Of a stretch of DNA of 41,423 bases, positions 4,762 through 29,064 are shown piece after piece; position 1 is the first letter of the stretch; every line of letters starts with the position of its first letter. Under the pieces are notes generated by a model that made no database searches, had not been told where the DNA came from, and saw only the letters and a list, made by a program, of their open reading frames with translations. This stretch comes from Macrostomum lignano (Eukaryota), in NCBI GenBank assembly GCA_002269645.1, contig NIVC01004578.1, positions 1 to 41,423 on the forward strand, written 5' to 3'. Both the position numbers and the translations under genes were made by a program.

Positions 4762-5650
4762 TACATGTATAGAGTGGGTTGGGACTCAATGTACATACGA
4801 GCTATATTCAGACTGGATGTACATCTAGGATTGGACTCAGTGTACATGTATTCAGGCTGAAGTACATCTAGGATTGGATTCAGTGTACATGTATTCAGAC
4901 TGATGTACATCTAGGATTGGATTCAGTGTACATGTATTCAGACTGAAGTACATCTAGGATTGGATTCAGTGTACATGTATTCAGACTGAAGTACATCTAG
5001 GATAGGATTCAGTGTACATTGTATTCAGACTGAAGTACATCTAGGATTGGACTCAATGTACATGTATTCAGACTGAATGTACATCTAGGATTGGACTCAA
5101 TGTACATGTATTCAGACTGGATGTACATCTAGGATTGGACTCAATGTACATGTATTCAGACTGATGTACATCTAGGATTGGACTCAATGTACATGTATTC
5201 AGACTGATGTACATCTAGGATTGGACTCAATGTACATGTATTCAGACTGATGTACATCTAGGATTGGACTCAATGTACATGTATTCAGACTGATTTACAT
5301 CTAGGATTGGATTCAATGTACATGTATTCAGACTGATGTACATCCAGGATTGGACTCAGTGTACATATATTCAGACTGATGTACATCTAGGATTGGATTC
5401 AATGTACATGTATTCAGACTGAAGTACATCTAGGATTGGACGCAATGTACATGTATTCAGACTGGATGTACATCTAGGATTGGACTCAATGTACATGTAT
5501 TCAGACTGATGTACATCTAGGATTGGACTCAATGTACATGTATTCAGACTGATGTACATCTAGGATTGGATTCAATGTACATGTATTCAGACTGATGTAC
5601 ATCCAAGATTAGACTCAATGTACATGTATTCAGACTGAAGTACATCTAGG
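4762..5650. repeat. 43-bp minisatellite (TGTACATGTATTCAGACTGATGTACATCTAGGATTGGACTCAA)n
   Basis: About 20 units. Each is a 20+23-bp dimer whose halves both start TGTACAT. Confidence 0.95.
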
Positions 5651-5770
5651 ATTGTACCCACCCATACAAACTGATAGGCCGCCCGTCTACCGACTCGCAA
5701 ACGGTGACACATACATATAATGTACTGTACAAATGTACATCTACGTAACAACAAGAGGCAAAAAACTCAC

Positions 5771-5927
5771 CCGACTTAAAGGAGAACTCAGACAGCAAAA
5801 TCCAGTCCGCGGTCGAGTCAAAGTACAAGCGCACTTTAACAAATCGTCCGACTCGATTGCCCACCTGGATGCTGATTGGCCGAGTGAACTGGCCCACCGA
5901 GTCGCGGCTGACTGCGCGCTCCACGGG
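5771..5927 (-). CDS. DDR: DDR-family receptor exon 6 (end of DS-like domain)
   Basis: PVERAVSRDSVGQFTRPISIQVGNRVGRFVKVRLYFDSTADWILLSEFSFKS resembles the DDR DS-like C-terminus. TACAG acceptor and G|GTGAG donor. One base short of phase compatibility with the previous exon. Confidence 0.85.
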
Positions 5928-5956
5928 CTGTACAGATAAGCATACAAACAAATATA

Positions 5957-6144
5957 ACTGACTGACTGACTGACTGACTGACTGACTGACTGACTGACTG
6001 ACTGACTGACTGACTGACTGACTGACTGACTGACTGACTGACTGACTGACTGACTGACTGACTGACTGACTGACTGACTGACTGACTGACTGACTGACTG
6101 ACTGACTGACTGACTGACTGACTGACTGACTGACTGACTGACTG
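5957..6144. repeat. Perfect (ACTG)47 microsatellite filling most of a DDR intron
   Basis: 188 bp of uninterrupted ACTG. Confidence 0.98.
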
Positions 6145-6152
6145 AATCTCAC

Positions 6153-6693
6153 CTGTCAGCGAACCGCTCGCCGCCAATGCTGAAGAAGAGCTCGGCCTTG
6201 GAGAACAGGCGCGTGTTCCAACTGAGGAAATCGTTATTAGTATCAATGTTGACGCTGTTGAACCGGCGCACCTTGTCGAATTCGAATAGCAGCTCGACGT
6301 TGTCGCGATTGTCGCCGAACTGTCGCCGATTCCAGCCGACATAGGGCAGCCCGGCGATGCCATCGTCCATGGGGTCGGCGCCGGGCGACACTTTGCTGGT
6401 GACGTAATCAGTCAGCTGGCCCAGGCCGCCCGACATCCAGCCGTTGCTAATGACGCCGTCGTAGTAGTGGTCGGAGAAGTCCGCCCGGCCGGAGGGCACG
6501 CGGTGGCCCTGGGGCCCGGAGTAGGCCACCACGCCCTGGTAGGTGGGGCAGCCGAACAGCTCCAGCTTGAGGCAGACGCTCACATCGCCGGAGTCCGGAT
6601 TGATGGGATAGATGCGCAGCACCTTGGCAACTAGGGCGGCTTCAGGCTCAGGTAGTTGCGCTTGTCCTTCAGGTCGGAGTTGCCTTTGATCAT
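6153..6693 (-). CDS. DDR: DDR-family receptor exon 5 (end of DS domain plus most of DS-like domain), with a 1-nt frameshift at 6634-6636
   Basis: MIKGNSDLKDKRNYLSLKPP/LVAKVLRIYPINPDSGDVSVCLKLELFGCPTYQGVVAYSGPQG...YDG...GGLGQLTD...YVGW...VELLFEFDKVRRF, which are DDR hallmarks. CGCAG acceptor and AG|GTGAG donor. Confidence 0.92.
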
Positions 6694-7673: not shown

Positions 7674-9097
<1,424 letters not shown>

Positions 9098-17289: not shown

Positions 17290-20140
17290 GTAGAAGAGTA
17301 GGAGACAAGGTAGAAGAGACAGGGGAGAGTAAGAGAGTGAGAGGGAAGAGTAGGAGAGTGAGAGGGGAGAGTAGGAGAGTGAGAGGTGAGAGTGAGAGGT
17401 GAGAGTAGGAGAGGGAGAGTAGGAGAGTGAGAGTAGGAGAGTGAGAGGGGAGAGTAGGAGAGTGAGAGGTGAGAGTAGGAGAGTGAGAGGGGAGAGTAGG
17501 AGAGTGAGAGGTGAGAGTAGGAGAGTGAGAGGGGAGTAGGAGAGTGAGAGATGAGAGTAGGAGAGTGAGAGGTGAGTAGGAGAGTGAGAGGTGAGAGTAG
17601 GAGAGTGAGAGGTGAGTAGGAGAGTGAGAGGTGAGAGTAGGAGAGTGAGATGGGAGAGTAGGAGAGTGAGAGGGGAGAGTAGGAGAGTGAGAGGTGAGAG
17701 TAGGAGAGTGAGAGGGGAGAGTAGGAGAGTGAGAGGTGAGAGTAGGAGAGTGAGATGGGAGAGTAGGAGAGTGAGAGGGGAGAGTAGGAGAGTGAGAGGT
17801 GAGAGTAGGAGAGTGAGAGGTGAGTAGGAGAGTGAGATGGGAGAGTAGGAGAGTGAGAGGTGAGAGTAGGAGAGTGAGAGGGGAGAGTAGGAGAGTGAGA
17901 GGTGAGAGTAGGAGAGTGAGAGGTGAGTAGGAGAGTGAGATGGGAGAGTAGGAGAGTGAGAGGTGAGAGTAGGAGAGTGAGAGGGGAGAGTAGGAGAGTG
18001 AGAGGTGAGAGTAGGAGAGTGAGAGGTGAGTAGGAGAGTGAGATGGGAGAGTAGGAGAGTGAGAGGTGAGTAGGAGAGTGAGAGGGGAGAGTAGGAGAGT
18101 GAGAGGTGAGAGTAGGAGAGTGAGAGGTGAGTAGGAGAGTGAGATGGGAGAGTAGGAGAGTGAGAGGTGAGAGTAGGAGAGTGAGAGGGGAGAGTAGGAG
18201 AGTGAGAGGTGAGAGTAGGAGAGTGAGAGGTGAGTAGGAGAGTGAGAGGTGAGAGTAGGAGAGTGAGAGGTGAGAGTAGGAGAGTGAGAGGTGAGTAGGA
18301 GAGTGAGAGGTGAGTAGGAGAGTGAGAGGTGAGAGTAAGAGAGTGAGAGGGAGAGTAGGAGAGTGAGAGGTGAGAGTAGGAGAGTGAGAGGTGAGTAGGA
18401 GAGTGAGATGGGAGAGTAGGAGAGTGAGAGGTGAGAGTAGGAGAGTGAGAGGTGAGTAGGAGAGTGAGAGGTGAGTAGGAGAGTGAGAGGTGAGAGTAAG
18501 AGAGTGAGAGGTGAGTAGGAGAGTGAGATGGGAGAGTAGGAGAGTGAGAGGTGAGAGTAGGAGAGTGAGAGGTGAGAGTAGGAGAGTGAGAGGTGAGTAG
18601 GAGAGTGAGATGGGAGAGTAGGAGAGTGAGAGGTGAGAGTAGGAGAGTGAGAGGGAGAGTAGGAGAGTGAGAGGTGAGAGTAGGAGAGTGAGAGGTGAGT
18701 AGGAGAGTGAGATGGGAGAGTAGGAGAGTGAGAGGTGAGAGTAGGAGAGTGAGAGGGGAGAGTAGGAGAGTGAGAGGTGAGAGTAGGAGAGTGAGAGGTG
18801 AGTAGGAGAGTGAGATAAGAGAGTAGGAGAGTGAGAGGTGAGTAGGAGAGTGAGAGGGGAGAGTAGGAGAGTGAGAGGTGAGAGTAGGAGAGTGAGAGGT
18901 GAGTAGGAGAGTGAGATGGGAGAGTAGGAGAGTGAGAGGTGAGAGTAGGAGAGTGAGAGGGGAGAGTAGGAGAGTGAGAGGTGAGAGTAGGAGAGTGAGA
19001 GGTGAGTAGGAGAGTGAGAGGTGAGAGTAGGAGAGTGAGAGGTGAGAGTAGGAGAGTGAGAGGTGAGTAGGAGAGTGAGAGGTGAGTAGGAGAGTGAGAG
19101 GTGAGTAGGAGAGTGAGAGGTGAGAGTAAGAGAGTGAGAGGGGAGAGTAGGAGAGTGAGAGGTGAGAGTAGGAGAGTGAGAGGTGAGTAGGAGAGTGAGA
19201 TGGAGAGTAGGAGAGTGAGAGGTGAGAGTAGGAGAGTGAGAGGTGAGTAGGAGAGTGAGAGGTGAGTAGGAGAGTGAGAGGTGAGAGTAAGAGAGTGAGA
19301 GGTGAGTAGGAGAGTGAGATGGGAGAGTAGGAGAGTGAGAGGTGAGAGTAGGAGAGTGAGAGGTGAGAGTAGGAGAGTGAGAGGTGAGTAGGAGAGTGAG
19401 ATGGGAGAGTAGGAGAGTGAGAGGTGAGAGTAGGAGAGTGAGAGGTGAGAGGTGAGTAGGAGAGTGAGAGGTGAGAGTAGGATAGTGAGAGGTGAGAGTA
19501 GGAGAGTGAGAGGTGAGTAGGAGAGTGAGAGGTGAGTAGGAGAGTGAGAGGTGAGAGTAAGAGAGTGAGAGGGGAGAGTAGGAGAGTGAGAGGTGAGTAG
19601 GAGAGTGAGATGGGAGAGTAGGAGAGTGAGAGGTGAGAGTAGGAGAGTGAGAGGGGAGAGTAGGAGAGTGAGAGGGGAGAGTAGGAGAGTGAGAGGTGAG
19701 AGTAGGAGAGTGAGAGGTGAGTAGGAGAGTGAGATGGGAGAGTAGGAGAGTGAGATGGGAGAGTAGGAGAGTGAGAGGTGAGAGTAGGAGAGTGAGAGGT
19801 GAGTAGGAGAGTGAGAGGTGAGTAGGAGAGTGAGAGGTGAGTAGGAGAGTGAGAGGTGAGAGTAAGAGAGTGAGAGGGGAGAGTAGGAGAGTGAGAGGTG
19901 AGTAGGAGAGTGAGATGGGAGAGTAGGAGAGTGAGAGGTGAGAGTAGGAGAGTGAGATGGGAGAGTAGGAGAGTGAGAGGTGAGAGTAGGAGAGTGAGAG
20001 GTGAGAGTAGGAGAGTGAGAGGTGAGTAGGAGAGTGAGAGGTGAGAGTAGGAGAGTGAGAGGTGAGAGTAGGAGAGTGAGAGGTGAGTAGGAGAGTGAGA
20101 GGTGAGTAGGAGAGTGAGAGGTGAGAGTAAGAGAGTGAGA
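17290..20140. repeat. Purine-rich satellite of 21/19-bp units (GTAGGAGAGTGAGAGGTGA[GA])n
   Basis: About 2.85 kb. The plus strand is essentially C-free. Source of the spurious 1039-aa ORF. Confidence 0.97.
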
Positions 20141-21144
20141 GAGGGAAATTGGGAGGGAGAACTTTAAAGAAGAGGAAGGCTCCAAAGCCACACCATTGTC
20201 TAAATAGCCTCAGTGATTGCTGATGACATACGCATGCTGAGGCAGGAGAATGAGAGAAAAATATTTGATGCCATCAGCAGATCGCAAATCAATCGTCACC
20301 TTCGCATTGTAATCTAATCCAAATTTTTAACAGGCTATTTAGCTCCAAAAGAGTTCTGTAGTATGTAGCCATGTAGCTGTGACAGTCCTGGCAATTGCTA
20401 CATTTTGTCGTTAAAGATCTAAGCCGTGGTGAAGCATCTGGTCCTCATCAAATATGCCTCTTATAATTTCCTAGCAAGGCTGGCTGCACACACTGCAGGT
20501 CGCACAAAGTCATCCAGCGCTTGAATGTGATGTGAATGTGTTTGCAAACCGAGGAAAGAGAGAGAGAAAAAAAACTGGTGCCTGCACACAAAGAGTGTTT
20601 GCAGGCTCCGAGGCTGCCGGTTCTGGCGCATTCGGGCGGCGTAGCAGCCAGGGGAAGTCGTCGATCTTTGAACGGGGACTTGGCTTTTCTTGTTTCTGTT
20701 GGCTGTCTTTCAGCAGTGCCTGGCCTGTGCACACATCAACTAAACACAGGCAACACTCAGCACACCCCACACAGAAACACTTGCGTTCCTGCAGAGAGAG
20801 AAGTGTTGTAGCGAATTGCGTAAAAATAATGCGATAATAACAGAATAAACACTGCTGGAGAGGCCGTGGGGAGGGGGGGTCTTCGCTCGTAAAGAAAAGT
20901 TGCAGAGTTCTCGCGTTCCGCATTGCCAGAGGCCAGCGTGGCCTCTGGATTCTTTCGATCAGTTCAGCCAATAATTAATTCATTTATTGCACGTCGCAGG
21001 TTGCTTAATATTGGTATTTTACGGATGAACTAATTTTTTGCAAGAAAAGTACGCGGGAGGCCAGCGTGTCGTTTGAGTTCCTGCACCTCCCGTACACCGC
21101 CCTCTGGCGCTTATTCATAGCGCACTTTTTGAAGCTATAGTCTT

Positions 21145-22834: not shown

Positions 22835-23660
22835 CCACTACTCATGATCCACGATAGATCTGTCACTCTACTCATGACCTACAATGGATCTGTCGCTCTA
22901 CTCATGACCTACAATGGATCTGTCGCTCTACTCATGACCTACAATAGATCTGTCACTCTACTCATGACCTACAATGGATCCGTCACCCTACTACTGACCC
23001 CCTCAGATAGATCCGTCACTCTACTCATGACCCCCTCAGATAGATCCGTCACACTACTACTGACCCCCTCAGATAGATCTGTCACTCTACTCATGACCCC
23101 CTCAGATAGATCAGTCACTCTACTCATGACCTACAATAGATCTGTCACTCTACTCATGACCCCCTCAGATAGATCCGTCACACTACTCCTCATTACCCCC
23201 TCAGATAGATCTGTCACCCTACTACTGACCCCCTCAGATAGATCTGTCACTCTACTCATGACCTACAATAGATCTGTCACTCTACTCATGACCCCCTCAG
23301 ACAGATCAGTCACTCTACTCATGACCTACAATAGATCTGTCAGGACTGTCACTCTACTTATGACCTACAATGGATCTGTCACTCTACTCATGACCTACAA
23401 TGGATCCGTCACTCTACTCATGACCCCAGATAGGTCCGTTACACTCTACTCATGACCCCCTCAGATAGGTCCGTCACTCTACTCATGACCCCCTCAGATA
23501 TATCCGTCACTCTACTCATGACCCCCTCAGATAGGTCCGTCACTCTACTCATGACCCCCTCAGATAGATCCGTCACTCTACTCATGACCCCAGATAGGTC
23601 CGTCACTCTACTCATGACCTCAGATAGATCCTTCACTCTACTCATGACCTCAGATAGATC
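22835..23660. repeat. 30/33-bp minisatellite (GTCACTCTACTCATGACCCCCTCAGATAGATCC and GTCACTCTACTCATGACCTACAATAGATCT), left copy
   Basis: Tandem units read directly. Confidence 0.95.
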
Positions 23661-24096
23661 TGTCATCAACACAAGCAATTGCAGCATCTGACAATCCTAA
23701 CTTTTCTAGTTTTATCAATCAACTTTAGCCACGATTCCCTGCCAATGGCTTATATAGGACAACAAGAAGGACGCCCAGGGACAGATTTGATGTCCAAGAG
23801 CGACCTGGCAGCTACACTTTAACTGCTAAGCCTTATCTGTAACTAAAGCCCGGGCTTAGGAGTCGGAAAGCAAAAGAAGCGCCAGAGATAAAAGCGGCGG
23901 GCGGGCTGGTGAACAGTAAATACGAGTTTGCAAGCTATAAAGTAAACTAGCAGCTATGGAGTGTAATGCCAGAGAAGGCAGATGGGTCAAGATGGATTGA
24001 TTTGAAAACTTGCCTCTATCTGTTTATCGCAATACGCGAGCGTATAGTCCACCAGTTTTCTAGAAACCTGGCTGGGGAACTGAAAGAGTCATATAC
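23137..24096. repeat. Left copy of ~1-kb direct duplication flanking the retrotransposon
   Basis: 23661-24096 equals 27186-27621 with 1 mismatch in 436 bp (G24075/C27600). The same order of minisatellite variants precedes both copies. Confidence 0.95.
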
Positions 24097-24108
24097 TCAT
24101 ATATCATA

Positions 24109-26475
24109 AAGGAGAATGTCCAGAGTCGTGTTCATCCCGAAACCCGCCAAGGGTGACTACACCAACGTGAAATCTTTCCGGCCCATCAGCCTCACTTCCT
24201 TTTGTGTTAAGCTGATGGAGAGGCTCATCCTGTGGAGGCTTCGAGAGTGCGACCTGCGCTCCGACCCCGTCAGTAAGTACCAGTACGCCTTCCAGCCCGG
24301 AAAGACGACTGAGCATGCTCTCCATGCCATTACCTCCAAGATCGAGAGTGCCATCCTTAGCAAACAACTCGCTTGCGGATGTTTGTTGACTTCGAAGGAG
24401 CCTTTGACAATGTCCTTTTTCGCTCCTTCAGAAACTCTCTTTCCCGCAGGAATGTGAGACACAGCATTGTTCGCTGGATTTATTTTATGATCCGCAATAG
24501 GTTTGCGACATCTACGCTTATGGGCGTTACCTACACCCGAGCGGTGATGAAAGGCGGCCCGCAAGGTGGCGTGCTAACTCCACTTCTTTGGAATCTCGTC
24601 ATGGACGAACTTCTAACCGCTGACATTCCCAGCAGTATCACCAGGGCGGGCTACGCTGATGACGTTGCCGCGGTCGTCAGCGGACCTGACCCCGCCACTC
24701 TGCGCAACCTGATGCAACAATTCGCCGACAAGGCGGCTGACTGGGCCACGCAACATGGCCTAAAAATCAGCGTCACGAAGACTGTCGCTGTCGTTTTCAC
24801 CAAGCGCCGTGCGTGGGAGATGAAAAACCTCACTGTCTATGGCAGAAACATCCCCTTCAAGAAGGAGGTCAAATACCTCGGTGTGACGCTAACGCATGAC
24901 CTGCGCTGGACGAAGCACCTTGATAACGTCATCGGTCGGGCAAAACGCTGCTTTGCCCAGCTGCGCAGAGCCATCGGGCCAACCTGGGGCCTCTCGCCTA
25001 GAACAGTCCGTTGGATTTATACCGGCATCATCCGGCCCAGTATCACATACGCGAGTCTCATCTGGACTAGCGTGCTGGAGCAGAAGACCGCCCGTCAGCG
25101 CCTACACCAGCTGCAGGGCAGCATTTGTCGTGCCATCACAGGTGCGTACCCGTCTACCCCTTACGAGGGGCTGAACACTATCCTTAATCTCCCTCCGCTT
25201 CACCTATTTATTAGGGCGGAGGCTATGAAGTCCGCCTCCCGACTTATCAGAGATAAAACGTTAAATAACGTACCCTCTGGCTTTATGCCAATGAAAACCT
25301 TAATCCCGCATATGGACTTTGTCCGCCGCGACCTCAACAACATCCACATGGACCTGGGCAATGTGGACAGTCGACTCCCCGCCCTCAACATCAGGAGGGG
25401 CTTCCAGACCGCCATCCCTGGCCGAGACAACATTCCGCTGGATGTCGGCGTGAACCGGCGCAGCCAGGGCATTCACTGCTTCACCGACGGCTCGCTGTTC
25501 AACGGCCGCGCTGGAGCGGGTATTGCCATTTTCCACGAGGGTAAGATGCTTCTCCAGGAAAGTCTGCACCTCGGTGAGAACACCTCAGTTTTCCAAGCTG
25601 AAATTTGCGCCATTGAGCAGTGTGCCCAGCAACTGTTTCAGGCGAACATTAATAATTTTGACATTAATTTCTACACTGATAGCCAAGCTGCTATTAAGGC
25701 CTTAACCACTGAGAATATCTCCGCTGCTACAGTATCTCAATGCCACCGCAGTGTGCAATCTCTCTCAGTCCTTAACAGGATTAGAATTATCTGGACACCT
25801 GGTCACAGCAACATCCTGGGCAACGAGCTAGCGGACTCTCTCGCCAAGGAGGGCAGCAACCCAGACGGCAAGCACCGTCTGATGAGGCTACCCACTCCAA
25901 GGTCGCAAGTCACCCGCCATATCCACAGGTGGCTCCATCAGCAGCACCAGCTCCACTGGAACAGCTGCACCGAGTACAGGCAGAGCCGCTCTGCCATGCC
26001 TAACCTGAACAGGAAAGTCTCTGATTACCTGATTTCGCTTAACAGAACCGACCTCAGGGAGATGTGCATGGTCCTAACCGGCCATGGTTTCTTCCAGAGA
26101 CATATCTCGTTGCAAACCGGTTGCCCTCCCACCTGTCCCTTCTGTGGCATAGGAGAGGAGACCGCGGAGCATCACGTCACCTTCTGCCCTTACTTCAACA
26201 AGGCGCGGCACAAATACATCGGCCACCCCCAGCGGATGGACGAGCTGACCACCCCGGACAATATCCGTGACCTTCGCGCCTTCGTCCGTGACTCCGGCCG
26301 GATGAGGGTCGCTGATGTCTCCACTGTGAACCTGCCGACTACGACTACTGGCGGGGACCGGGTGCACCCCCAAGGTTAATCCTTGTGCTCTTTTACCTTG
26401 GGGTTGCGATAGGGGCCTCGCGGCCTATTCGCGGCGCCTGCGCCCCCCGTCAGTAGTAAGTAAGTAAGTAAGTAG
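24109..26475 (+). mobile_element. 5'-truncated non-LTR retrotransposon with RT, RNase H and CCHC knuckle (I-group, probably LOA/R1-like), antisense in DDR intron 1
   Basis: RT and RNase H ORF, a ~95-bp 3' UTR and a (TAAG)4 tail at 26457-26472. No endonuclease or ORF1 present. Clade assignment is inference from motif style. Confidence 0.95.
24116..26379 (+). CDS. Reverse transcriptase-RNase H polyprotein fragment (~754 aa if the 1-nt frameshift at 24377-24378 is corrected)
   Basis: [52 protein letters not shown]. RNase H motifs FTDGS, QAE, YTDS, WTPGH, NELAD. C-terminal CPFC-X8-H-X4-C. Confidence 0.93.
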
Positions 26476-27621
26476 GTCCGTCACTCTACTCATGACCCCT
26501 CAGATAGATCCGTCACACTACTCCTCATGACCCCCTCAGATAGATCTGTCACCCTACTACTGACCCCCTCAGATAGATCTGTCACTCTACTCATGACCTA
26601 CAATAGATCTGTCACTCTACTCATGACCCCCTCAGATAGATCAGTCACTCTACTCATGACCTACAATAGATCTGTCAGGACTGTCACTCTACTTATGACC
26701 TACAATGGATCTGTCACTCTACTCATGACCTACAATGGATCCGTCACTCTACTCATGACCCCAGATAGGTCCGTTACACTCTACTCATGACCCCAGATAG
26801 GTCCGTTACACTCTACTCATGACCCCAGATAGGTCCGTCACTCTACTCATGACCCCTCAGATAGATCCGTCACTCTACTCATGACCCCTCAGATAGGTCC
26901 GTCACTCTACTCATGACCCCTCAGATAGGTCCGTCACTCTACTCATGTCACTCTACTCATGATAGAGATCAGATCCGTCACTCTACTCATGACCCCCTCA
27001 GATAGGTCCGTCACTCTACTCATGTCAGATAGATCCGTCACTCTACTCATGACCCCAGATAGGTCCGTCACTCTACTCATGACCTCAGATAGATCCGTCA
27101 CTCTACTCATGACCCCAGATAGGTCCGTCACTCTACTCATGACCTCAGATAGATCCTTCACTCTACTCATGACCTCAGATAGATCTGTCATCAACACAAG
27201 CAATTGCAGCATCTGACAATCCTAACTTTTCTAGTTTTATCAATCAACTTTAGCCACGATTCCCTGCCAATGGCTTATATAGGACAACAAGAAGGACGCC
27301 CAGGGACAGATTTGATGTCCAAGAGCGACCTGGCAGCTACACTTTAACTGCTAAGCCTTATCTGTAACTAAAGCCCGGGCTTAGGAGTCGGAAAGCAAAA
27401 GAAGCGCCAGAGATAAAAGCGGCGGGCGGGCTGGTGAACAGTAAATACGAGTTTGCAAGCTATAAAGTAAACTAGCAGCTATGGAGTGTAATGCCAGAGA
27501 AGGCAGATGGGTCAAGATGGATTGATTTGAAAACTTGCCTCTATCTGTTTATCGCAATACGCGAGCGTATAGTCCACCAGTTTTCTAGAAACCTGGCTGC
27601 GGAACTGAAAGAGTCATATAC
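26473..27621. repeat. Right copy of the direct duplication (30/33-bp minisatellite 26473-27185 plus unique 436 bp)
   Basis: The diagnostic CAGGACTGTC variant occurs at 23341 and 26676. This array is about 190 bp longer than in the left copy. Confidence 0.95.
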
Positions 27622-28179
27622 GCTTTGGGCTGGGCCTCTCTATACGTGGGCAGTTAAATTCGTGTAAACTGAAACCTTACACAGGTAAAATGCATGAATG
27701 GCCTAAAAAGTTTCTGCAACAGCCCCGCTCGGTCCCCAAGGAGCAACCCCTAAACTCCCATAAAGTCTTGGAAAGTTTTTTAAAACCACCCTTTGGCATC
27801 TGTCTGTCGCATTGCAACTTGCCTAAAGCCAAAGGTGACTCATGCATGCGAGCCGCGTAACCGCCGGACACGGGGTCATTCAATACCAACCCCGGTGCTA
27901 GGAAACTTTAACACGGGCGGCCTCGATTGTCAAAGATTATCTTTAACCTTGCATGCGATATTGTTTACACGATTGCTTTATTATACTTTATATTTATACT
28001 CTGAAGAGTAAGACTGGTATTGATACAGCGCGTGACTAACAGGCCAGGTCACGAAAGGTGACGAATCGCTTTTGATATTGTCGCGCATGTTTGAGAAGTA
28101 AATTGAAATCCTCAATTTGCAGCAGGATCTCAAAAAAACTGTCATTTCGACACCCTAGTCAAAAGTATAAGTGAATTTG

Positions 28180-28440
28180 GTCATCACACTCCAGTCATTT
28201 GGTCAGCACACTCCAGTCGTTTGGTCAGCACACTCCAGTCGTTTGGTCAGCACACTCCAGTCGTTTAGTCATCACACTCCAGTCATCTGGTCATCACAGT
28301 CCAGCCATTTAGTCATCACACTTCAGTCATTTGGTCATCAGACTCCAGTCATTTAGTCATCATTTAGTCATCACACTCCAGCCATTTGGTCATCAGACTC
28401 CAGTCATTTAGTCATCACACTCCAGTCATCAAGTCATCTG
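28180..28440. repeat. 22-bp minisatellite (CACTCCAGTCATTTGGTCATCA)n
   Basis: About 11 units. Confidence 0.92.
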
Positions 28441-29064
28441 GTTAGTACACTCACGTCATTAGCTGATTTTCTTAAATCCAGCCATAAAATCTTCAGTCAT
28501 AGGATTAATTTACCAACCGATACGATACAAGCTAGCCTAATTTGATACAGTACATGAATTGATTCCACCCCTGGGAAATATCCCTAATGCAACTCGAGAC
28601 AAGCATGCAGAAGGGTTAAATGGGTTCCAGCTCTATTGGATAACATATGCTGCACGTATGTTCAGTCGGGTCAAGCCGGGCAGGCAACCACTGTAGCCAT
28701 ATAGCTGTAGAATTTGTCAAAAGCACATCCAGCATTTCGGGGGCAAAGAAAAGAGATGGGCTCTTCAGTTTTCCCCTTTCTTCCCCTTCCCGGGGGAGCC
28801 GCAAAAGCAGAATCTTGGGCTAGAGTTATATGCAGCTAGACAGGCGGGGAGCAGTGAGAGTCCGACACCCGACATTAAGCAGCTTAGAGGCCACTTTTCA
28901 AATCCCAAAACAAATTATAAGGGTTGCCGGCGCTATGGCTATTTAGACTCGAGAGCCCTATTGCAGCGCATGGCTTAAGTACGCCAGACGCCTACACAAC
29001 CTGCGCCACGCTGTGAAATGACTTACCTGTGAAAGAAACCCTAAAGCAAAATTAACGCAGTTTT

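What the first reader, a model, noticed from the sequence alone, without database searches (positions are those of the whole stretch)
23137..27621. Non-LTR retrotransposon flanked by a ~1-kb direct duplication: giant TSD or a repair-coupled insertion
Seen: 960 bp (23137-24096) precede the 5' junction and reappear right after the (TAAG)n tail (26473-27621). The 436 unique bp differ at one base, and the minisatellite variant order is shared but about 190 bp longer on the right. The tail joins the target through TAG microhomology. Established: TPRT TSDs are usually under about 20 bp, and the 126-bp TSD of rotifer R9 (recalled) is considered exceptional. Inference: first-strand priming occurred in the minisatellite and second-strand resolution about 1 kb away, with slippage during gap fill-in, or the insertion was copied from a homolog during break repair. 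If typical of the family, this is a retrotransposon that duplicates kilobase blocks and propagates minisatellites.
Basis: partly seen in the sequence, partly recalled or inferred. Interest (0 to 1): 0.8.

Follow-up and report, generated by a model that had tools for sequence, protein, structure and literature searches.

The report
Truncated LINE flanked by 1-kb duplication
A dead, 5'-truncated LINE retrotransposon in a flatworm (Macrostomum lignano-like) genome sits exactly at the joint of a ~1-kb tandem duplication of its target, which is best read as an unusually long target-site duplication, an outcome already documented for human L1 and a Chlamydomonas LINE, and it could not be checked against reads or other copies.

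Summary
Window 23137-24096 (960 bp) recurs at 26473-27621 (1149 bp). The last 539 bp differ at one base. The first nine minisatellite units keep the same variant order. The right copy carries about 189 bp of extra, partly irregular units. Between the copies lie a 14-nt filler, a 2.36-kb 5'-truncated non-LTR element (RT, RNase H, CCHC; one 1-nt frameshift) and a (TAAG)4 tail.

Protein matches of 90-99% place the family in Macrostomum lignano. The geometry is what one TPRT event with its two strand breaks about 1 kb apart, or a cDNA end joined to a sister chromatid, would give.

This is a known kind of event. Human L1 gives TSDs over 100 bp, and over 1 kb in NER-deficient cells. L1 bridges tandem duplications in tumours. 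Dualen-4b insertions in Chlamydomonas carry duplications of median 900 bp.

Its family-wide and minisatellite-propagating idea is untested, because no other M. lignano DNA was reachable. About 38% of the window is tandem array, so landing in one needs no targeting.

A chimeric assembly in this neopolyploid genome cannot be excluded. Interest is modest.

The parts
22838..23136 (.). Upstream part of the 30/33-bp minisatellite. It is not duplicated and is continuous with the left copy.
   Evidence: TRF array 22838-23665; unit map; the alignment shows no partner for it in the right copy.
23137..24096 (.). Left copy of the duplicated target, made of minisatellite 23137-23665 plus unique sequence 23666-24096. 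Its right end abuts the 5' side of the insert.
   Evidence: Alignment to 26473-27621; 539-bp block with 1 mismatch.
24097..24110 (+). 14-nt filler TCATATATCATAAA at the 5' junction. Its first 7 nt repeat the target end TCATATA (24089-24095).
   Evidence: It is absent from the right-copy flank and is not element-coding when compared with P0001. A 7-mer match to the flank has P of about 0.02 in shuffles.
24111..26456 (+). 5'-truncated non-LTR retrotransposon body. RT spans about 24134-24891, with a 1-nt deletion after 24378. RNase H spans 25471-25857, the CCHC knuckle 26122-26190, the stop codon 26377-26379 and the 3' UTR 26380-26456.
   Evidence: Pfam RVT_1 (2e-18 and 1e-7) and RNase_H (4e-13); ORFs; 98% identity to P0001 and 90-99% to M. 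lignano UniRef entries; CCHC coordinates.
26457..26475 (+). (TAAG)4 tail plus TAG, which is shared with the start of the duplicated block and is a possible 2-3 nt microhomology.
   Evidence: Sequence. It is the only (TAAG)n in the window, with 0.12 matches expected by chance. The tail is a family feature: the P0016 C-terminus ...RRLRPPSVVSK translates the 3' UTR plus GTAGTAAGTAAG.
26473..27621 (.). Right copy of the duplicated target, made of minisatellite 26473-27190 plus unique sequence 27191-27621. Its left end abuts the tail. It carries about 189 bp of extra units, including irregular ones at 26933-27036.

Best explanation
One aberrant target-primed reverse transcription (TPRT) event made both junctions.

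Shown directly:
- The insert is a 5'-truncated copy of an APE-type LINE family of Macrostomum lignano with a (TAAG)n tail.
- The tail abuts the left end of one copy of a roughly 1-kb target block.
- The truncated 5' end abuts the right end of the other copy, through 14 nt of filler.

Inferred sequence of events:
1. A 3'-OH in the bottom strand inside the minisatellite, at a ...GATAG/GTCC-type unit, annealed to the UAAG repeats of the element RNA and primed cDNA synthesis.
2. Reverse transcription aborted in the RT region.
3. The free cDNA end was not joined 5-20 bp away. It was joined about 1 kb downstream, to a top-strand 3' end at window position 24096/27621.
4. That distant end could have been a second nick on the same duplex, or an end on the sister chromatid.
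5. The joint was made by microhomology or polymerase-theta-like end joining, which left templated filler.
6. Fill-in or replication then left the 1-kb block on both sides, which amounts to a kilobase target-site duplication or local tandem duplication.
7. The minisatellite part later diverged, or diverged during fill-in.

The inserted copy lacks ORF1, the endonuclease and the N-terminal part of RT, so it is inert. The result is a structural scar rather than a functional module.
For: - Duplication and its boundaries.
- Element identity and 5' truncation.
- The family has an APE endonuclease: P0017 against the L001 APE ORF gives 43% identity, and that ORF matches Pfam Exo_endo_phos_2.
- The tail is intact and is a family feature. 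This argues for priming on the RNA 3' end rather than random cDNA capture.
- The filler copies the adjacent 7-mer. 5' extranucleotides and extremely long TSDs are both associated with 5'-truncated L1 (PMC2912911; PMC11702581).
- The flanks are not LINE-derived, and there is no second element copy or second tail in the window.
- Precedents for the size: L1 TSDs over 1 kb (PMC5223499), L1-bridged tandem duplication through the sister chromatid (PMC7058536) and Dualen-4b with a median of 900 bp (PMC9977147).
Against: - The two copies are not identical. The minisatellite differs by 189 bp and by 5 point or indel changes. Mismatch density is 5/320 there against 1/539 in the rest (Fisher p = 0.03). 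A strict TSD is identical at birth, so extra events or error-prone fill-in must be assumed.
- No empty site, spanning read or second family copy could be examined.
- M. lignano assemblies are known to contain expanded or chimeric haplovariants (PMC10733133).
- The endonuclease preference of the family is unknown, so the 3' junction cannot be scored as endonuclease-dependent.
Confidence: 0.6

Rival explanations
1. Assembly chimera. Two haplotypes or subgenome copies each carry an independent insertion of this family. One lies after the unique block and the other inside the minisatellite. The assembler joined them through the near-identical LINE sequence and so created a false duplication.
For: M. 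lignano is a neopolyploid, and its assemblies are oversized and described as error-prone, with expanded haplovariants (PMC10733133). The right minisatellite has variants absent from the left array, namely 32-nt C4 units and irregular units, as allelic arrays might.
Against: This needs two same-orientation insertions of one family within 1 kb at allelic sites. That is far less likely a priori than a single long-TSD event (inference). The 539-bp block differs at only one base. The unique segments show no homopolymer-type noise, so local consensus quality looks good. Both junctions lack homology, so each must exist in real reads.
Confidence: 0.15
2. Endonuclease-independent, repair-coupled capture. 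A spontaneous break or stalled fork in the fragile minisatellite was repaired with misalignment, producing a tandem duplication. A LINE cDNA or RNA was used as a patch at the joint.
For: The insertion point lies inside a minisatellite in a region that is 38% tandem array. There is templated filler at the 5' joint. The right array carries complex rearrangements. L1 intermediates are known to recombine with independent DSB ends (PMC7058536; PMC11702581).
Against: The element's 3' end is complete, with its family-specific (TAAG)n tail joined directly to the target. In my recollection of Morrish et al. 2002, endonuclease-independent L1 insertions are often 3'-truncated or tail-less. This rival shares most steps with the best explanation and differs only in who made the first break.
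Confidence: 0.15
3. Real unequal homologous recombination between two LINE copies inserted about 1 kb apart on homologues. This would leave one hybrid LINE at the joint of a duplication.
For: The product would be indistinguishable in this sequence from what is seen: no matching short TSDs and one LINE at the joint.
Against: It needs two independent nearby insertions plus a crossover. There is no trace of a second copy, a second tail or short TSDs. A sister-chromatid version would leave three LINEs, which are not seen.
Confidence: 0.05
4. An LTR-type element, with the 1-kb direct repeats acting as LTRs around an RT/RNase H core.
For: It superficially resembles direct repeats flanking RT and RNase H.
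Against: - The RT is of the non-LTR type. Relatives carry APE and a C-terminal CCHC, and are named jockey or Lian.
- The ORF is truncated inside RT.
- There is a simple-repeat tail.
- No protease or integrase is present.
- The left 'repeat' is continuous with 300 bp more of the same minisatellite.
Confidence: 0.01

Closest known systems
Long-TSD outcomes of human L1 retrotransposition (Gilbert 2002/2005 and Symer 2002 as cited in PMC5223499; Servant et al. 2017)
   Same: A 5'-truncated LINE insert with an intact tail, extra nucleotides at the 5' joint, and a TSD of hundreds of bp to over 1 kb. This is attributed to a distant second-strand break.
   Different: Those events were recovered in cultured, often repair-deficient human cells with a poly(A)-tailed L1. 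The case here is a fixed or assembled germline copy of a (TAAG)n-tailed, RNase H-bearing LINE in a flatworm, and the two copies have since diverged in a minisatellite.
Dualen-4b_cRei LINE of Chlamydomonas reinhardtii (Lopez-Cortegano et al. 2023, PMC9977147)
   Same: LINE insertions flanked on both sides by a duplicated target of median 900 bp, interpreted as exceptionally long TSDs.
   Different: For Dualen this is a family trait seen in many de novo events, and it is tentatively ascribed to its two endonucleases (APE plus RLE). The element here has no RLE: only about 60 residues follow the CCHC knuckle. Only one copy is known.
L1-mediated tandem duplications in tumours and L1-overexpression models (PMC7058536; PMC11702581)
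   Same: A single short LINE insert with its tail sits at the joint of a direct tandem duplication. The published model is a cDNA joined to a 3' overhang downstream on the sister chromatid.
   Different: The scale differs (22.6 Mb in the tumour case, small duplications in the model system) and the context is somatic.
R9 of bdelloid rotifers (Gladyshev and Arkhipova 2009)
   Same: A non-LTR element with a TSD far above the usual length (126 bp, as quoted in PMC9977147).
   Different: R9 is an R2-superclade, RLE-type, rDNA site-specific element with a constant TSD. The element here is APE-type, sits in a non-rDNA minisatellite, and has a TSD about eight times longer that is seen only once.
I / LOA / R1-type LINEs with simple-repeat tails (for example the Drosophila I factor with (TAA)n, from my own knowledge)
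   Same: The family has the architecture APE, RT, RNase H and C-terminal CCHC, with a short tandem-repeat tail in place of poly(A). Relatives L001 and L002 have (TGA)n or (ATG)n tails.
   Different: Clade placement was not tested phylogenetically. The best named relative is only about 35% identical (Lian-Aa1-type protein P0107).

Membership tests
APE-type non-LTR retrotransposon (LINE) with RNase H | Reverse transcriptase domain of the non-LTR type | tested here: met
   Pfam RVT_1 2.1e-18, with the upstream fragment at 1.4e-7. Homologues include jockey- and Lian-named proteins.
APE-type non-LTR retrotransposon (LINE) with RNase H | RNase H domain downstream of RT, followed by a C-terminal CCHC knuckle | tested here: met
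   Pfam RNase_H 4.1e-13 at residues 367-495. CPPTCPFCG...HHVTFCP lies at 26122-26190.
APE-type non-LTR retrotransposon (LINE) with RNase H | Apurinic-like endonuclease N-terminal to RT | tested here: inconclusive
   It is absent from this copy because of the 5' truncation at about 24111. It is present in the family: P0017 residues 281-369 are 43% identical to the APE ORF of relative L001, which matches Exo_endo_phos_2 at 3e-23.
APE-type non-LTR retrotransposon (LINE) with RNase H | 3' end formed by poly(A) or a simple repeat, with no LTRs | tested here: met
   (TAAG)4 at 26457-26472. The same 3' end is read through in P0016.
Named clade (I, LOA, R1, Nimb ...) | Phylogenetic grouping of the RT with reference members of the clade | not tested
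   No reference set (Repbase) was available. There are only about 35% identity hits to a Lian-like protein.
TPRT target-site duplication (long-TSD class) | The same target segment directly abuts both ends of the insert. Its left end must meet the 3' tail and its right end must meet the 5' end. | tested here: met
   The alignment boundaries are 23137/26473 and 24096/27621.
TPRT target-site duplication (long-TSD class) | The two copies are identical apart from later mutation | tested here: inconclusive
   The unique part and last units match at 538/539 positions, but the minisatellite differs by 189 bp and 5 small changes.
TPRT target-site duplication (long-TSD class) | An empty site with a single copy of the segment exists (allele, paralogue or outgroup) | not testable with these tools
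   No M. lignano DNA is in any searchable collection.
TPRT target-site duplication (long-TSD class) | The 3' junction lies at the family's endonuclease cleavage motif | not testable with these tools
   No other genomic copies were available to derive a motif.
Family-wide long-TSD LINEs (Dualen-4b_cRei, R9) | Most or all copies of the family carry long TSDs | not testable with these tools
   Only one copy is in the window, and none could be retrieved elsewhere.
Dualen clade | A restriction-like endonuclease in addition to APE | tested here: not met
   Pfam finds only RVT_1 and RNase_H. Only about 60 residues follow the CCHC motif, which is too short for an RLE domain.

The most novel reading that the evidence does not exclude
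Kilobase target-site duplications could be a recurrent property of this (TAAG)n-tailed, APE-only LINE family in Macrostomum lignano, perhaps favoured by insertion into minisatellites. The family would then be a measurable source of small tandem duplications and of minisatellite spread in a metazoan germline.
Probability: 0.06. Interest if true: 0.55.

Novelty: new member of a known kind. Interest (0 to 1): 0.3.

Why it matters
If the structure is real, it is a naturally occurring, germline-transmitted example of a LINE insertion resolved with its two breaks about 1 kb apart, in an animal. The junction details are still legible: an intact simple-repeat tail, abortive reverse transcription and templated filler.

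Such cases show that LINE integration intermediates create small segmental duplications outside cancer cells and algal mutation-accumulation lines. They also give a concrete locus at which second-strand resolution can be studied in a regenerating flatworm model.

The case does not open a new category. A single copy in an error-prone neopolyploid assembly carries limited weight until reads or other copies are examined.

Tried and rejected
- Other copies or tails in the window: none were found by self-BLAST, tblastn with family proteins, or a (TAAG)3 scan.
- Flanks as old LINE remnants: a tblastn HSP of P0002 ran upstream of the junction to 24029. A sensitive search of 27150-29000 with 120 homologues gave only noise with E >= 0.004, so this was rejected as an extension artefact.
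- Retrieval of other M. lignano copies or an empty site: exact-protein look-ups for two window ORF versions, P0001 and P0005, found nothing. Both metagenome scans, one by protein and one by 3'-UTR DNA pattern, also found nothing.
- Relatives L001 and L002 (51-54% amino-acid identity): these are full-length 5.2-kb elements with (TGA)n or (ATG)n tails, but their contig flanks are too short to read TSDs.
- RNA-gene target: there were no Rfam or tRNA hits, so this is not a snRNA-, tRNA- or rDNA-specific insertion.
- LTR-element reading: rejected (see rivals).
- 3'-transduction reading: considered and rejected. The right-hand block would have to be carried by read-through and then land precisely next to its own source sequence.
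- Dualen membership: rejected because there is no RLE.
Full report
**What is in the sequence**

The window is eukaryotic and very rich in tandem arrays. At least 15 different mini- and microsatellites cover 37.6% of the 41 kb.

A 30/33-bp minisatellite occupies 22838-23665 and again 26473-27190. Self-BLAST finds one long non-tandem repeat in the window, 22945-24096 against 26473-27621.

A semi-global alignment fixes the register as 23137-24096 against 26473-27621:
- The last 539 bp (23558-24096 and 27083-27621) differ at one base, G at 24075 against C at 27600.
- A unit-by-unit map shows that the first nine units are the same variants in the same order, including a unique 36-nt and a unique 39-nt unit. 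They carry five small differences, three of them in the first 30 bp.
- In the middle, four left units (134 bp) face eleven right units (about 324 bp). These include three irregular units at 26933-27036 and several 32-nt 'C4' units that do not occur anywhere in the left array.
- The last three units are identical.

**The insert**

The sequence between the copies codes, on the + strand, for a reverse transcriptase, an RNase H and a CCHC knuckle.
- RT: Pfam RVT_1 at 2e-18, plus an upstream fragment at 1e-7.
- RNase H: 4e-13, at 25471-25857.
- CCHC knuckle: 26122-26190.
- The reading frame is open from 24116 to the stop at 26377-26379, apart from a single 1-nt deletion after 24378. Family protein P0001 reads ...[17 protein letters not shown], whereas the window shifts frame at GGA^TGTTTG.
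- An 80-nt 3' UTR follows, then (TAAG)4 at 26457-26472. This is the only such repeat in the window, with 0.12 expected by chance.

A database search gave dozens of Macrostomum lignano UniRef entries at 88-99% identity, and P0001 at 98%. The window therefore comes from M. lignano or a very close relative.

Gene model P0016 ends in ...RRLRPPSVVSK. This is the translation of this 3' UTR running into GTAGTAAGTAAG, so the tail is a family feature.

Family gene models carry an N-terminal segment that is 43% identical to the Exo_endo_phos_2 ORF of a 54%-identical full-length relative, L001, which is 5.2 kb long. The family is thus an APE-type LINE of about 5 kb. The copy here is truncated inside RT and lacks ORF1, the endonuclease and the start of RT.

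Relatives L001 and L002 end in (TGA)n or (ATG)n, so simple-repeat tails are typical of the group. I did not place the element in a named clade. The best named relative is a Lian-like protein at about 35% identity.

**The junctions**

At the 3' side the tail is followed by TAGGTCCGTCAC..., and the left copy starts TAGATCTGTCAC.... A 2-3 nt overlap between tail and target is therefore possible but cannot be proven.

At the 5' side the element does not begin at 24097. P0001 reads ...[13 protein letters not shown], and the window matches only from GGAGAATG at about 24111. The 14 nt at 24097-24110 (TCATATATCATAAA) belong neither to the element nor to the downstream flank. Their first seven bases repeat the target end at 24089-24095. 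The probability of such a match is about 0.02 in shuffles. Templated filler of this kind is a signature of microhomology or polymerase-theta-type end joining (established knowledge). 5' extranucleotides occur in 14.6% of 5'-truncated human L1 insertions (PMC2912911).

**What it most likely is**

The block that abuts the tail with its left end is the same block that abuts the truncated 5' end with its right end. This is the geometry of a target-site duplication.

One event explains both junctions:
1. Priming occurs on the RNA tail at a bottom-strand 3'-OH inside the minisatellite.
2. Reverse transcription aborts.
3. The cDNA end is joined about 1 kb downstream, either to a distant second nick on the same duplex or to an end on the sister chromatid.
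4. Fill-in follows.

Evidence and its basis:
- The flanks are not LINE-derived.
- There is no RNA-gene target.
- An intact family-specific tail argues for genuine target-primed synthesis rather than random capture of a cDNA fragment (inference, plus recalled properties of endonuclease-independent L1 insertions).

What does not fit a textbook TSD is the divergence of the minisatellite halves. Mismatch density is 5/320 there against 1/539 elsewhere (Fisher p = 0.03), and there is the 189-bp rearranged middle. Error-prone fill-in across a repetitive 1-kb gap, later minisatellite mutation or conversion, and origin of the two copies from different chromatids are all compatible with this. They cannot be separated here.

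**Rivals**

- Assembly chimera of two haplotypes that each carry an independent insertion. M. lignano is a neopolyploid whose assemblies are oversized and described as error-prone (PMC10733133). This needs two same-orientation insertions of one family within 1 kb. The unique segments look cleanly polished. I give it about 0.15.
- Endonuclease-independent, break-repair-coupled capture in a fragile minisatellite. This shares most steps with the favoured model and differs only in who made the first break. About 0.15.
- Real unequal recombination between two nearby insertions. About 0.05.
- An LTR-element reading. It is excluded by the RT type, the tail, the truncation and the continuity of the left 'repeat' with more minisatellite.

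**Comparison with what is known**

- Human L1 gives TSDs over 100 bp in up to 10% of HeLa events. In NER-deficient cells most inserts exceed 100 bp, and 38% of those exceed 1 kb. This is explained by a distant second nick (PMC5223499).
- 5'-truncated L1 in HeLa shows 'extremely long TSDs' (PMC2912911).
- L1 overexpression yields small tandem duplications at insertion sites (PMC11702581).
- A single L1 bridges a 22.6-Mb tandem duplication in a tumour, with the cDNA joined to a sister chromatid (PMC7058536).
- De novo Dualen-4b_cRei insertions in Chlamydomonas are flanked by duplications of median 900 bp, read as exceptionally long TSDs. That paper also quotes 126 bp for R9 (PMC9977147).

The present element is not a Dualen. 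It has no restriction-like endonuclease, because only about 60 residues follow the CCHC motif. If the long TSD were a family trait, the dual-endonuclease explanation could not apply here.

**What could not be done**

No other M. lignano DNA was reachable:
- Exact-protein look-ups failed.
- The contigs of the two relatives have flanks too short to read TSDs.

Three things therefore remain untested: the TSD length distribution of the family, its target preference, and the existence of an empty site or of spanning reads. Because 38% of the window is tandem array, insertion into a minisatellite needs no special targeting.

**Verdict**

However, the phenomenon is a known kind, the family-wide idea is unsupported, and an assembly artefact is not excluded. 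This is a new member of a known kind, with interest of about 0.3.

Noticed in passing
window 1-41423 (arrays listed): The window is 37.6% tandem array, with at least 15 unrelated mini- and microsatellites. Several are strongly strand-asymmetric: 17321-20146 is a purine-only 21/40/61-nt array with GC skew 1.0, and 7674-9097 is a 1.4-kb (CAGA)n array with AT skew 1.0.
   Followed up: partly
window 5646-6622, minus strand: Two exons encode a discoidin-domain-receptor DS-like domain (Pfam PF21114, 5.6e-27 and 3.7e-9). They are split at profile position 123/124 by a GT...AG intron of about 240 nt that consists almost entirely of a perfect (CAGT)47 microsatellite (5957-6145).
   Followed up: partly
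window 26453-26475; proteins P0017, P0023, P0043, P0073, P0083: The (TAAG)n tail contains repeated GTAAGT, the consensus 5' splice donor. Many M. lignano UniRef gene models are chimeras of this LINE's C-terminal or 3'-UTR translation with unrelated host domains (GTPase/E3 ligase, RRM, amino-acid transporter, thioredoxin). The tails may therefore act as splice donors, either for real or only for gene predictors.
   Followed up: no
L001 1-5211 and L002 1-5187 (JGI metagenome samples 3300040778 and 3300040779): These are full-length relatives of about 5.2 kb with 51-54% amino-acid identity. Each has an ORF1 without a Pfam match, an APE ORF and an RT-RNase H ORF, and ends in (TGA)n or (ATG)n. They are apparently animal LINEs assembled from environmental samples.
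   Followed up: partly
window 26933-27036: The right-hand array has three irregular minisatellite units: two 14-nt stubs GTCACTCTACTCAT, and a scrambled unit ...CATGATAGAGATCAGATCC. It also has 32-nt 'C4' units. All are absent from the whole left array.
   Followed up: partly
window 28175-28438: A second, unrelated 22-bp minisatellite lies only about 550 bp downstream of the duplicated block, so the insertion sits between closely spaced arrays.
   Followed up: no
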